Source: Saccostrea echinata
Taxonomy: Eukaryota
NCBI RefSeq assembly: GCF_033153115.1
Contig: NW_026889757.1
Span: 6,076,001 to 6,140,000 of the forward strand
Length of the DNA stretch: 64,000 nt
Reading direction: 5' to 3'
Positions 44,001-47,000 of this stretch are shown here, one piece after another. The notes beneath the pieces were generated by a model, which saw only the letters and a list, made by a program, of their open reading frames with translations, was not told the origin of the DNA and searched no databases. The stretch's first letter is position 1. Every line of letters starts with the position of its first letter. The translations under genes and the position numbers were made by a program.

Positions 44001-47000
44001 AAGCACTGGGCACAGCTAGAAAAGACAAGGACAAAAAAAGATTCAATTTGAATTCCTTCTGCATCCAACTTTTCAACAACCTATATTTCCTTTACTGGTC
44101 TCCTTATATGAAGGGAACTAAAGTTATGAGTACAAAAAGCTAAGTAATCAGTATTAAAGAAAATGAAAATTGATACAAAATTTTATATAAGATACATGTA
44201 TGTATTGTACATGTATATATGGTAATATGAAGAAAGAAATTTTATCTAAAAGCATAATAAAGCTGAAGCAAAATTGGGAAAATAAAAACAAGCAACTTAA
44301 TTTGCACAAAGCGGTGTCATACAGTATGAAAAACAGTGCAAAGGCTAGCAAAAGATACATTAAAGCTAGCAATAACTGCTAAAATAAGCAATATGGAAGA
44401 AGCCATCTCACAAGTGAAGGTAGATTGCAAAGACAAAATTGAAATTATATTTAGCCTCAGAAAAATAGAATCAAAGAAAGATTAAATATCCTTCTGAAAA
44501 AAGGGAAAATTTAGAATGTCTTAATAAACATAGCAATCACCAAATTCAACTAGGACCACCACCCTTATACATTTTCTATTGAAAACTTCATACCCCCATT
44601 AGTTTCATACCTGAGCCCAGTTAGTACTTACACAAAACAGGTTGTATGCCACACCTGACCATTAAAATTCACCATCTGTTCCCATGGAGACAAGGTCTCC
44701 TGACATTTAGAGCATGTAAAACTTGGGGCTGGTCTTGCTTTTCTGCTTCTATGCGGAACGCAACAGTGAGAGCATAAATACAGGAAGCATTCTTTAGAGT
44801 ACAAAATGTATGCCAATGAAGTAAATGTGGAAATTTATTGGAAGTAGAGAGAAATAAAACCATGTGATAGCAGCACTGGAATTTTTTATTTCTGTTTTTT
44901 AAAAGATAATATGTTGAAACATACCAATTAGAGCAAAAAGTACACACATAAATTTCCACATTTACTACAAGTATATAAAAGTTAGCAGTTACAATGGAGT
45001 TTCAAGTCTGTCACTGAAGAATTCCAGTCAGTGAGATTTTCATAGATTCAATCCTCTGAAATCATGCATTCAGATTATAAAAGTTCCTGATTTCAGAATG
45101 AAAATGTGCACATCCTGGTGTCACTTTAGGTTTCTCTCTATCATATAAAGCACTCAGATTCAATACAAAGAGGGAAGAAGTGATTTTCTAAATTATCTGG
45201 ATACAGGCTTTCTTCCTAAACTTTGTAGCCTAACATGAAAAACATATGCGGTGGCAATAAATTGTACATGTATGTATATAATTATATGAGATTCAAACGA
45301 ATTTCTATATGGGAGCTCATCATGTGTAAACTACATTCATGATATAAAATAAGGTACTGATAGAAACTTATCAGAATACAATAAAAAACAATCTTATGAT
45401 GTTGAACTTGTTACAAAAGCTGCATTCATCTCATATAATTTTTAACCGGGCACATACATTCAAATAAGACGTAAGGACATTTACCTAATGTTGGAGAATT
45501 TCACCTAAATGTAGAGCAATTTCTAAAAGCCATAAAAAGAGGTGTTAATAAAAGATTAACCAAATTAATTACAATGCAGCTTAAAATAAAGACAGTTTTT
45601 CTGAGATTTCTAGACTATCAAATTTTGAATGCAGAAGTATAAATTATAGGGAAAGATTAATACATGCACTATGCAAGACAAGATAAGAGGACTTCTTATT
45701 TTTCATAGCAAATAAAAGTATATGCAAGCTACAGTTCTAGCTATTTAGTTGCAAAAATAAAATTTGAAAGAAAAAACCTCTGCAGATCATTGGATTAGAA
45801 AGCTCTCACATTTCAAAGTCAAGTTTTCAAGCATTCACAATTGCTCACTAAAATCAATATTGTCATTCACCTTGAACTTACTAACTTTACAATTTAATCA
45901 CATTACGTATGATTATAGTTAATATTTCTACTGGGTATATATTATGTAAATAATGAATCTACACACCTCTAATGACTACATGTAAACCAGTTTATATTAA
46001 TTCATGTTTTGGAATAACACTTAAAAATTCACATGCTTAACTATTTTGCATATTGTGTTAAAATGAGAAGACATGCATGATTGATACTGCAGTGTGTACA
46101 TGTATATATGACAGTTGTTTGGGGAGTTATAAACATCTGCAACATCTAATAATTTTGCATTCACCATTCTTAATTGTTTAATTATAAGAACAAAAGTTGC
46201 ATTCATACTACTACAGTGTATGATATTTCTTTCTCAGAGGTGCACATAAAAATCAAAGATAGTTTTTCAACTATGAATTCAGCAACATAATAAAAATTCA
46301 TATTTTATGCTCATGAATAAAAAGTCTAGTGAGAAGAACTGATCAAAATTGTCAGCTGAATTTCTTCCTACATTGTTATGTATGTATGAATGTGTAAACC
46401 ACTGTCCTCTGCAAAGTTGATTATAATTATCATGTACCAACCTACATTAATGTGTAAGACAGCTATAAATGACCTTTCATGTTGGGATGAACTGTTATGG
46501 GAGGGACCTGGAGAGAGGGGTGGAGTATACTTACACAAAGCACTGTGTGTGCCACATTTCTCCATTGGAGTTGACGATTTCCTCATTAGCTCCAAACCCC
46601 TCATGACACCTGTGGCATAACGCCCCATTTCCATAGGACATGTTGCTGCTGTGAGAAAAAAACAAACAAACAAAAGAATGTATACATGCTCAAGGTACGC
46701 CCACACTGAATATTAAAAATACTTGCAGAATCCTGTATGGAATTTCCCACATCCTGTTGTTTTGCAATATTTACATCTTGTAAATGCACTTAATTAATTA
46801 ACTGTCATCTGTTGTTCTGACAAGATTTTCAAATTTTATCAAAATTATTTCATGTGACTAATACAAAATTTAACACCCACATATCATATGATACTGTTCT
46901 TAAATAGAGGGAATATATGTACTTGCTCTTACATATTTTCAGGAACAACGCAAGTTAACTGTACATGACAACATATGTTCATATACAGGGCATTTAAAAT

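What the first reader, a model, noticed from the sequence alone, without database searches (positions are those of the whole stretch)
44632..46648. Duplicated, swappable first zinc finger of PINCH LIM1 (candidate mutually exclusive exons)
Seen: two tandem exons, 2A (46535-46648, [19 protein letters not shown]) and 2B (44632-44748, [19 protein letters not shown]). Both are phase 2-2 with lengths divisible by 3, have intact C-x2-C-x18-H-x2-C spacing, and share the TTTGT|GTAAGT donor. 2B keeps all zinc ligands but changes surface residues, adds a basic RSRKAR leader and has no ATG of its own before the finger. Known: LIM1 binds the ILK ankyrin repeats to nucleate the ILK-PINCH-parvin complex, and vertebrates diversify it through the PINCH1/2 paralogs. 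Inference: this single gene diversifies the ILK-binding module by splicing. Including A, B, both (an extra finger) or neither all stay in frame, and two first exons add further combinations. I know of no description of this but could not search the literature.
Basis: partly seen in the sequence, partly recalled or inferred. Interest (0 to 1): 0.8.

Follow-up and report, generated by a model that had tools for sequence, protein, structure and literature searches.

The report
Conserved duplicate zinc-finger exon in PINCH
An oyster's PINCH cell-adhesion gene carries an anciently duplicated, still intact exon for the first zinc finger of its first LIM domain, and gene models of related molluscs insert this exon after the usual one rather than swapping it in.

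Summary
On the minus strand, exon 2A (46648-46535) and exon 2B (44748-44632) both encode a C-x2-C-x18-H-x2-C finger. They share the same phase and the same TTTGT|GTAAGT donor. They are the only two such matches in the 923 Mb genome.

2B is not a decaying copy. Synonymous sites between 2A and 2B are saturated, while codon positions 1 and 2 stay alike. Orthologous 2B fingers occur in scallop, abalone, limpet and Gigantopelta gene models. They form one branch (support 99/96) and are nearly as conserved as 2A.

"Mutually exclusive" is not supported. Of the 165 PINCH-family proteins examined, all 12 that hold 2B also hold 2A just before it, and none has 2B alone. In a model of the scallop A+B isoform, solved PINCH LIM1 structures superimpose on 2B plus the shared second finger, which leaves 2A as an orphan half-LIM.

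My best reading is an ancient cassette exon that rebuilds the ILK-binding LIM1.

Six literature searches found no description.

The parts
59985..59995 (-). Coding end of first exon E1a: ATG ACG GGA AG| then donor gt (phase 2). The 5' end of the exon was not determined.
   Evidence: sequence. The 'MTGS' start is shared by many mollusc PINCH models (e.g. P0070, P0079, P0043, P0045).
51599..51768 (-). Alternative first coding exon E1b (MANPRS...[19 protein letters not shown]...PLD, ends AG|, phase 2).
   Evidence: sequence; 55% identity over 56 residues to the N-terminus of C. gigas LIMS1 isoform X4 (P0057). The motif LQSL..TES.LFQRRR recurs in mollusc isoforms.
46535..46648 (-). Exon 2A: the usual first zinc finger of LIM1, with its own in-frame ATG and a strong pyrimidine tract at the acceptor.
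   Evidence: 38 of 39 residues identical to C. gigas X4. Best solved match is PINCH1 LIM1 residues 11-40 (3f6q_B, E 5.9e-8).
44632..44748 (-). Exon 2B: a duplicated first zinc finger of LIM1 preceded by a 12-residue leader. It has a weaker pyrimidine tract and no ATG before the finger. It is a candidate cassette exon.
   Evidence: Its best single-stretch solved matches are the PINCH2 and PINCH1 LIM1 first fingers (25.7 and 25.4 bits). Orthologues in 6 other mollusc genera. One branch with 99/96 support.
43970..44015 (-). Exon 3: start of the LIM1 second finger ([15 protein letters not shown]), shared by all isoforms.
   Evidence: 15 of 15 residues identical to C. gigas X4.
35690..42960 (-). 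Exons for LIM2 to LIM5 and the C-terminal tail (9 exon pieces, stop at about 35690).
   Evidence: 86-100% identity per exon to C. gigas X4.
44817..44969 (-). Inverted repeat (22-nt arms, 95% complementary, 109 nt apart), lying 69-221 nt upstream of the 2B acceptor. A role in splicing is unproven.
   Evidence: I2. It forms in the minimum-energy fold of 44540-44990, z -2.95. No comparative data.

Best explanation
The window holds the single PINCH (LIMS) gene of an oyster.

Exon 2B is an ancient tandem duplicate of the exon for the first zinc finger of LIM1. It has been kept under protein-coding constraint since before bivalves and gastropods split.

It most likely works as an optional cassette exon spliced in between exon 2A and exon 3. 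Skipping it gives canonical five-LIM PINCH, in which the 2A finger and the shared second finger make up LIM1. Including it puts the 2B finger directly against the shared second finger, with the usual two-residue spacer. LIM1 is then rebuilt with a different first half. The 2A finger is pushed out as a lone N-terminal half-LIM on a short flexible linker.

Because LIM1 is the module that binds the ILK ankyrin repeats, inclusion should change or retune how PINCH joins the ILK-PINCH-parvin complex.

Shown: the exon anatomy, the constraint, the orthology, and the A+B architecture in relatives' models.
Inferred: that this oyster splices in the same way, and the effect on ILK binding.
For: Anatomy: intact frame, all four zinc ligands, ag acceptor and consensus donor.

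Constraint within the genome:
- Between 2A and 2B, pS is 0.97 (saturated) against pN 0.33.
- Identity by codon position is 18, 20 and 9 of 28.

Orthology:
- 2B-type fingers occur in models of Mizuhopecten, Pecten, Argopecten, Haliotis, Patella and Gigantopelta.
- Mean pairwise identity among 2B fingers is 19.9 of 29. Among 2A fingers it is 22.0 of 29. For 2A against 2B it is 15.0 of 29.
- Five columns are fully diagnostic.
- All 7 2B fingers sit on one branch with support 99/96, and oyster groups with scallops at 80/94.
- The 2B segments of relatives hit window 2B best (60-65%), and their 2A segments hit window 2A best.

Usage:
- 12 of the 165 proteins examined carry 2B. All 12 have 2A, then a 9-12-residue leader, then 2B, then CAQCF.
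- The same species also have isoforms with 2A alone.

Structure:
- In the AlphaFold model of the Pecten A+B isoform, the 2B leader (residues 42-48) has pLDDT under 50.
- PINCH1 LIM1 (3f6q_B, Z 7.8, rmsd 2.1 A, 59 residues) aligns to model residues 50-109.
- PINCH2 LIM1 (3ixe_B, Z 8.1, rmsd 2.8 A, 62 residues) aligns to residues 47-110. Both ranges cover 2B plus the second finger, not 2A.

Splice sites: the 2B acceptor has a poorer pyrimidine tract than the 2A acceptor, as is common for optional exons.
Against:
- The A+B isoforms are computed RefSeq models. None of the 12 also carries a Logan, JGI or ENA source, whereas some 2A-only isoforms do. I therefore saw no independent assembled transcript with 2B.
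- Only up to 15 members per cluster were listed (for example 15 of 46 and 15 of 36). Unlisted isoforms, including a 2B-only one, cannot be excluded.
- No oyster isoform with 2B was seen. The only oyster protein retrieved, C. gigas X4, has E1b plus 2A.
- Two word-based searches aimed at 2B found no candidates.
- All listed isoforms of Mercenaria, Dreissena, Pomacea, Littorina, Babylonia, Biomphalaria, cephalopods and a chiton lack 2B, so the exon can be lost.
- Z scores of about 8 are only middling on the tool's own scale.
- The residues of LIM1 that touch ILK could not be read. The two structure papers are not held.
Confidence: 0.6

Rival explanations
1. 2A and 2B are mutually exclusive exons. 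Transcripts starting at E1a or E1b take either 2A or 2B, giving two PINCH proteins with swapped first fingers of LIM1.
For: The exons are homologous and in tandem, with the same phase and the same donor. E1a and E1b both supply an ATG in phase 2, so E1-to-2B-to-exon 3 stays in frame. Many cluster members were not listed, so a 2B-only isoform could be hidden.
Against: - 12 of 12 models with 2B also include 2A, and 0 of 165 proteins have 2B alone. Co-inclusion contradicts exclusivity by definition.
- No enforcing mechanism is visible. The lengths are 114 and 117 nt, both divisible by 3. The intron between the exons is 1786 nt. The donors are identical GT donors.
- Inverted repeats in the region are at the level expected in AT-rich intron, and no comparison with other species was possible.
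- 2A has the stronger acceptor.
Confidence: 0.12
2. 2B was once functional but is an unused relic in this oyster. It is intact by luck or lost only recently, as it seems to have been lost from heterodont bivalves and from caenogastropod and heterobranch snails.
For: No oyster isoform with 2B was retrieved. The listed isoforms of several mollusc groups lack it. A 39-codon open frame can survive for some time without selection.
Against: - The oyster and scallop 2B fingers are 20-21 of 29 identical. That equals the 21 of 29 for their 2A fingers, so 2B has not sped up on the oyster line.
- All four zinc ligands, the frame, the ag acceptor and the consensus donor are intact.
- The leader differs among lineages only by whole codons.
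Confidence: 0.1
3. The 2B exons arose by separate duplications of 2A in oysters, scallops and basal gastropods. On this view the resemblance among them is convergent and says little about age or constraint.
For: Only 29 alignable residues are available. The root of the small tree is unknown.
Against: - All 7 2B fingers fall on one side of a branch with 99/96 support, and do so in 98% of 200 bootstrap trees.
- Within a species, 2A and 2B share 14-18 of 29 residues, fewer than 2B shares across classes (15-21 of 29).
- Five columns separate every 2B from every 2A.
Confidence: 0.03

Closest known systems
Predicted LIMS1 isoforms of other molluscs that hold two first fingers: Mizuhopecten X3/X4, Pecten X3, Argopecten X4/X5, Haliotis X3/X4, Patella vulgata X2, Gigantopelta X1 (RefSeq models seen)
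   Same: They carry the same exon. The 2B finger is orthologous, with diagnostic residues K4, I/L9, an aromatic residue or Cys at 18, Q/N21 and the EQ[MI][VI]N motif. It sits in the same position, between the 2A finger and CAQCF.
   Different: These are computed models of other species. The window's exon has a different, basic 12-residue leader. No oyster model with the exon was seen. I found no paper that describes any of them.
Mutually exclusive exons derived from tandem exon duplication, as surveyed in PMC8373072, PMC9741552 and PMC5740500 (I saw only the search listings and abstract starts)
   Same: Tandem homologous exons of equal phase and nearly equal length encode the same structural element. 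The duplication is ancient and both copies are constrained.
   Different: Here relatives' models include both copies at once or 2A alone. I saw no exclusion mechanism. 'LIMS1' occurs 0 times in the main text of those surveys.
Vertebrate PINCH1 and PINCH2 paralogues, whose LIM1 domains compete for the ILK ankyrin repeats (3f6q, 3ixe; titles)
   Same: Both provide two alternative versions of the ILK-binding LIM1 in one organism. Both window fingers match the first finger of these LIM1 domains.
   Different: Vertebrates use two whole genes. Here one gene varies only the first half of LIM1 through an extra exon, and the usual finger stays in the protein.
FHL 'four and a half LIM' proteins (architecture recalled, not tested; FHL LIM domains appear among the fold matches)
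   Same: A lone single zinc finger sits N-terminal to complete LIM domains.
   Different: The family and origin are unrelated. Here the half-LIM would arise only when an optional exon is included.

Membership tests
PINCH / LIMS (five-LIM adaptor of the ILK-PINCH-parvin complex) | Five tandem LIM domains and a short basic C-terminal tail | tested here: met
   Exon pieces for LIM1 to LIM5 and the KKRLKK tail lie in order on the minus strand. Per-exon identity to C. gigas LIMS1 X4 is 86-100%.
PINCH / LIMS (five-LIM adaptor of the ILK-PINCH-parvin complex) | LIM1 first finger matches solved ILK-binding LIM1 domains | tested here: met
   2A: 3f6q_B at E 5.9e-8. 2B: 3ixe_B at E 2.7e-5 and 3f6q_B at E 4.2e-5, over chain residues about 10-40.
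PINCH / LIMS (five-LIM adaptor of the ILK-PINCH-parvin complex) | Binding of LIM1 to the ILK ankyrin repeat domain | not testable with these tools
   This needs a binding assay or a complex model. The papers with the interface residues are not held.
Mutually exclusive exon pair | Tandem homologous exons with the same phase, coding for the same element | tested here: met
Mutually exclusive exon pair | The two exons are never included together | tested here: not met
   In relatives, 12 of 12 models with 2B also hold 2A. This could not be tested in this genome.
Mutually exclusive exon pair | Each exon is found alone in some transcript | tested here: not met
   2A alone is common. 2B alone was seen in 0 of 165 proteins. 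The cluster listings were incomplete.
Mutually exclusive exon pair | A mechanism that enforces exclusion: frame shift, steric hindrance, incompatible splice sites or competing RNA pairing | tested here: inconclusive
   Frame, distance (1786 nt) and splice-site type give no exclusion. Inverted repeats exist (I2, I5), but there is no comparative support for them.
Cassette (skipped or included) alternative exon | Transcripts both with and without the exon from one gene | tested here: inconclusive
   Met at the level of predicted isoforms in Mizuhopecten, Pecten, Argopecten, Haliotis, Patella and Gigantopelta. No reads were seen for any species, and none for this oyster.
Exon under purifying selection | Excess of synonymous over non-synonymous change, and conservation across species | tested here: met
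   pS 0.97 against pN 0.33 between the copies. 2B is as conserved as 2A between oyster and scallops.

The most novel reading that the evidence does not exclude
Molluscs have kept, since before the split of bivalves and gastropods, a splicing switch that rebuilds the ILK-binding LIM1 of PINCH. Including exon 2B replaces the first finger at the interface and frees the original finger as an extra half-LIM. The result is a 'five and a half LIM' PINCH whose affinity or partner choice in the ILK-PINCH-parvin complex differs by tissue or stage. This would do through one exon what vertebrates do with the PINCH1 and PINCH2 genes. In oysters the basic leader, and perhaps a direct E1b-to-2B join, could add a true swap form.
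Probability: 0.25. Interest if true: 0.6.

Novelty: new member of a known kind. Interest (0 to 1): 0.4.

Why it matters
PINCH LIM1 is the handle by which ILK is recruited into the ILK-PINCH-parvin complex at integrin adhesions. This exon is a natural, conserved alternative version of half of that handle, made by splicing within a single gene.

It gives a ready-made pair of variants for asking which LIM1 surfaces set ILK binding. It is also a clear case of a tandem-duplicated exon that appears to be added rather than exchanged.

It also corrects the idea that the pair is mutually exclusive. And it shows that the exon already sits, unremarked, in predicted isoforms of several molluscs.

Tried and rejected
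- HMMER search of 1.84 billion representatives with the 2B peptide: 18 hits at E <= 0.001. Most were multi-LIM repeat proteins and none was a full-length PINCH. Three were short fragments (P0010, P0015, P0017).
No genomic DNA of relatives could be fetched, so there is no between-species dN/dS and no check of the intron position of 2B in other species.
- Word-based protein searches aimed at 2B found no candidates. These were the window's 68-residue open frame, region 29-68, and Pecten X3, region 42-81.
- Metagenome scan: 68 pattern matches and 19 loci. All have an NSNG-type (2A-like) finger, each locus has one finger exon only, and none has a second copy downstream. Molluscs are probably nearly absent from that collection.
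- Independent origin of 2B in each lineage was rejected by the tree.
- Literature: six searches found no paper on duplicated or alternative LIM1 exons of PINCH/LIMS1. I read passages of PMC3561323, PMC8799556 and PMC6203859; they confirm only that LIM1 binds the ILK ankyrin repeats. The two structure papers, PMC2634877 and PMC2841223, are not held. I therefore make no claim about which first-finger residues touch ILK. Supplementary tables of the exon-duplication surveys were closed and might list the gene.
Exons were searched one at a time and the joined step was left out.
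Full report
WHAT IS THERE

The window has 33.6% G+C and no N. On its minus strand it carries a complete PINCH/LIMS gene.

Stop-free pieces with LIM motifs lie in order from about 44015 down to 35690 and cover LIM1 (second finger) through LIM5 and the basic tail. 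Local tblastn with Crassostrea gigas LIMS1 isoform X4 (P0057, XP_011427148.1) gives 86-100% identity per exon for those exons. It gives 38 of 39 for exon 2A, but only 55% for the N-terminal exon E1b.

The window therefore comes from an oyster related to, but not the same as, C. gigas. That is an inference: the assembly is unnamed, with 923,105,932 bases in 425 contigs.

I built no joined model of the gene. Each exon was handled on its own and the joined step was left out.

THE OBSERVATION

Exon 2A runs 46648-46535 (114 nt). Exon 2B runs 44748-44632 (117 nt). Both follow an ag acceptor and end in TTTGT|GTAAGT. Both are entered in phase 2, and both encode C-x2-C-x18-H-x2-C.

2A holds an in-frame ATG. 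2B has none before the finger.

- The first exon E1b (ATG at 51768, donor after 51599) ends ...GAC AG|.
- The first exon E1a ends ATG ACG GGA AG| at 59985.

A six-frame search of the whole assembly with 2B finds two places only: 2B itself, and 2A at 46% identity and E 0.0048. The pair is also the longest direct repeat in 43900-47300. DNA similarity ends at the exon borders plus nine intron bases, so the duplication is old.

IS 2B A LIVE EXON?

Three lines of evidence say yes.

1. Comparison within the genome. Over the 28 alignable codons, 2A and 2B are identical at 18, 20 and 9 of 28 first, second and third positions. Nei-Gojobori gives pS 0.97 (saturated) and pN 0.33. That is the pattern of two coding sequences, not of one coding sequence and one drifting copy. 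With 84 sites, though, the test is modest.

2. Orthologues in other molluscs.
   - I took a full-length, intronless PINCH reading frame from a metagenome contig (L021) and searched with its residues 1-66 only. This retrieved mollusc LIMS1 proteins, and three cluster look-ups added their isoforms.
   - I examined 165 proteins, P0019-P0183. Twelve hold a second first-type finger between the 2A finger and CAQCF: Mizuhopecten X3 and X4, Pecten X3, Argopecten X4 and X5, five Haliotis entries (X3, X4), Patella vulgata X2 and Gigantopelta X1.
   - Their second fingers share with window 2B five columns that separate every 2B from every 2A: R/K at 4, G/non-G at 8, F/[IL] at 9, S/[CFY] at 18 and E/[NQ] at 21.
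   - Mean identity is 19.9 of 29 among 2B fingers, 22.0 of 29 among 2A fingers and 15.0 of 29 between the classes. Oyster against scallop is 20-21 of 29 for 2B and 21 of 29 for 2A.

3. A tree. I built a maximum-likelihood tree of 25 fingers: 7 of type 2B, 7 of type 2A from the same taxa, and 11 single fingers from other molluscs and ecdysozoans.
   - All seven 2B fingers fall on one side of a branch with support 99/96, and do so in 98% of 200 bootstrap trees.
   - Oyster groups with scallops at 80/94.
   - With 29 columns, little else is resolved.

The duplication therefore predates the split of pteriomorph bivalves from basal gastropods. I recall that split as Cambrian; it comes from no call. 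2B has since evolved almost as slowly as 2A.

HOW IS IT USED?

- In all 12 models that hold 2B, 2A comes first, followed by a poorly conserved leader of 9-12 residues, then 2B, then the shared second finger.
- No protein has 2B without 2A (0 of 165).
- The same species have isoforms with 2A alone, on several alternative first exons.
- The annotated pattern is therefore inclusion or skipping of 2B with 2A constant.
- Nothing in the sequence would enforce exclusion. Both lengths are multiples of three, the intron between the exons is 1786 nt, and both exons use the same GT donor.
- The 2B acceptor (ctcactgttgcgttccgcatag) has a poorer pyrimidine tract than that of 2A (ttgtttgtttgtttttttctcacag), as is usual for an optional exon.

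WHAT INCLUSION WOULD DO

In a LIM domain the two fingers are joined by two residues. After inclusion, 2B rather than 2A is followed by 'FV' and the second finger.

- An AlphaFold model of the Pecten A+B isoform was built from 38 aligned sequences. Its mean pLDDT is 75.3 and its pTM is 0.33. pLDDT falls below 50 at residues 1-10 and 42-48, the 2B leader.
- In a structural second look, PINCH1 LIM1 from the ILK complex (3f6q_B; Z 7.8, rmsd 2.1 A, 59 residues) aligns to model residues 50-109. PINCH2 LIM1 (3ixe_B; Z 8.1, rmsd 2.8 A, 62 residues) aligns to residues 47-110. Both ranges are 2B plus the second finger.
- Those Z values are middling by the tool's own note, so they support the adjacency argument without proving it.
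- The A+B protein would thus be a 'five and a half LIM' PINCH, with a rebuilt LIM1 and the 2A finger left as an orphan.
- LIM1 binds the ILK ankyrin repeats (passages of PMC3561323 and PMC6203859). An effect on assembly of the complex is therefore a reasonable inference, but it is untested.

WHAT WEAKENS THIS

- I have no transcript evidence at all for this oyster.
- The A+B isoforms are computed models. My belief that such alternative models need transcript support comes from recall, not from a call.
- None of the 12 also carries a Logan, JGI or ENA source, while some 2A-only isoforms do.
- Cluster listings were capped at 15 members (15 of 46, 15 of 36, and so on). A 2B-only isoform, or an oyster isoform with 2B, may simply not have been shown.
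- Two searches aimed at 2B were blank.
- 19 metagenome loci held only 2A-type fingers, one per locus.
- All listed isoforms of Mercenaria (X1-X5), Dreissena, Mactra, Pomacea, Littorina, Babylonia, Biomphalaria, Physella, Aplysia, Octopus, Sepia, Liolophura, Sinanodonta and Potamilus lack 2B. The exon has therefore probably been lost several times, or is rarely used there.

COMPARISON WITH WHAT IS KNOWN, AND NOVELTY

- The gene is an ordinary member of the PINCH family.
- The exon pair looks like the tandem-duplicated exons that give mutually exclusive splicing, but it fails the defining test of never being co-included, at least in relatives.
- Functionally it parallels the vertebrate PINCH1 and PINCH2 pair, but within one gene and for half a domain.
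- Six full-text searches found no paper on it.
- The exon is, however, already present in public predicted isoforms.
- I rate it a new member of a known kind: a conserved alternative exon born by tandem exon duplication. The modest twist is that it is added rather than exchanged.

VERDICT

| Reading | Probability |
|---|---|
| Best explanation as a whole: conserved coding exon, used as a cassette after 2A, rebuilding LIM1 | about 0.6 |
| True mutual exclusion | about 0.12 |
| Unused relic in this oyster | about 0.1 |
| Independent origins of 2B | about 0.03 |

- Observation: confirmed.
- Taken on its own, the claim that 2B is a conserved coding exon rates about 0.85.
- Interest: 0.4.

Noticed in passing
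window 51599-51768 (minus strand): The N-terminal extension encoded by E1b carries a motif, L(R/K)LQSL..(T/N)(E/Q)S.LFQRRR. It recurs in PINCH isoforms of bivalves, gastropods, a chiton and a cuttlefish, with a weaker echo (DSDLYQRRQ) in a barnacle. Its function is unknown to me.
   Followed up: partly
window 59985-59995 (minus strand): E1a supplies only 'MTG' plus a split Ser codon. The same MTGS start heads short isoforms across molluscs. An upstream ATGATGGAAAAGTGA lies about 70 nt 5' of it, a possible small upstream reading frame.
   Followed up: no
window 44817-44838 / 44948-44969 and 44567-44585 / 44793-44811: A 22-nt, 95% complementary inverted repeat lies just upstream of the 2B acceptor. 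A weaker pair (19 nt, 79%) brackets exon 2B. The first forms in the predicted fold, region z -2.95. They could affect 2B inclusion, or could just be repeat debris in AT-rich intron.
   Followed up: partly
protein P0015 (119 aa, ENA contig of 32,485 bases): A single open frame joins an 87-residue N-terminal extension with its own ATG directly to a LIM1-type first finger. The finger mixes 2B-type states (K4, non-G8, F18) with 2A-type states (E21). It may be an alternative first exon with its own finger in an unknown animal.
   Followed up: no
L021 9-1028, L004 175-1200, L016: Metagenome contigs hold full-length PINCH reading frames without introns, so they are probably cDNA-like (metatranscriptome) or host contamination. 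L021 is closest to heterodont bivalve PINCH (cluster of P0019: Mercenaria, Dreissena, Mactra).
   Followed up: partly
protein P0118: A Dreissena polymorpha model of 2145 residues ends in a normal PINCH (finger 1 at about residue 1830). It is either a fused gene model or a very long alternative N-terminus.
   Followed up: no
It lies in the intron between E1b and exon 2A. I did not study it.
   Followed up: no
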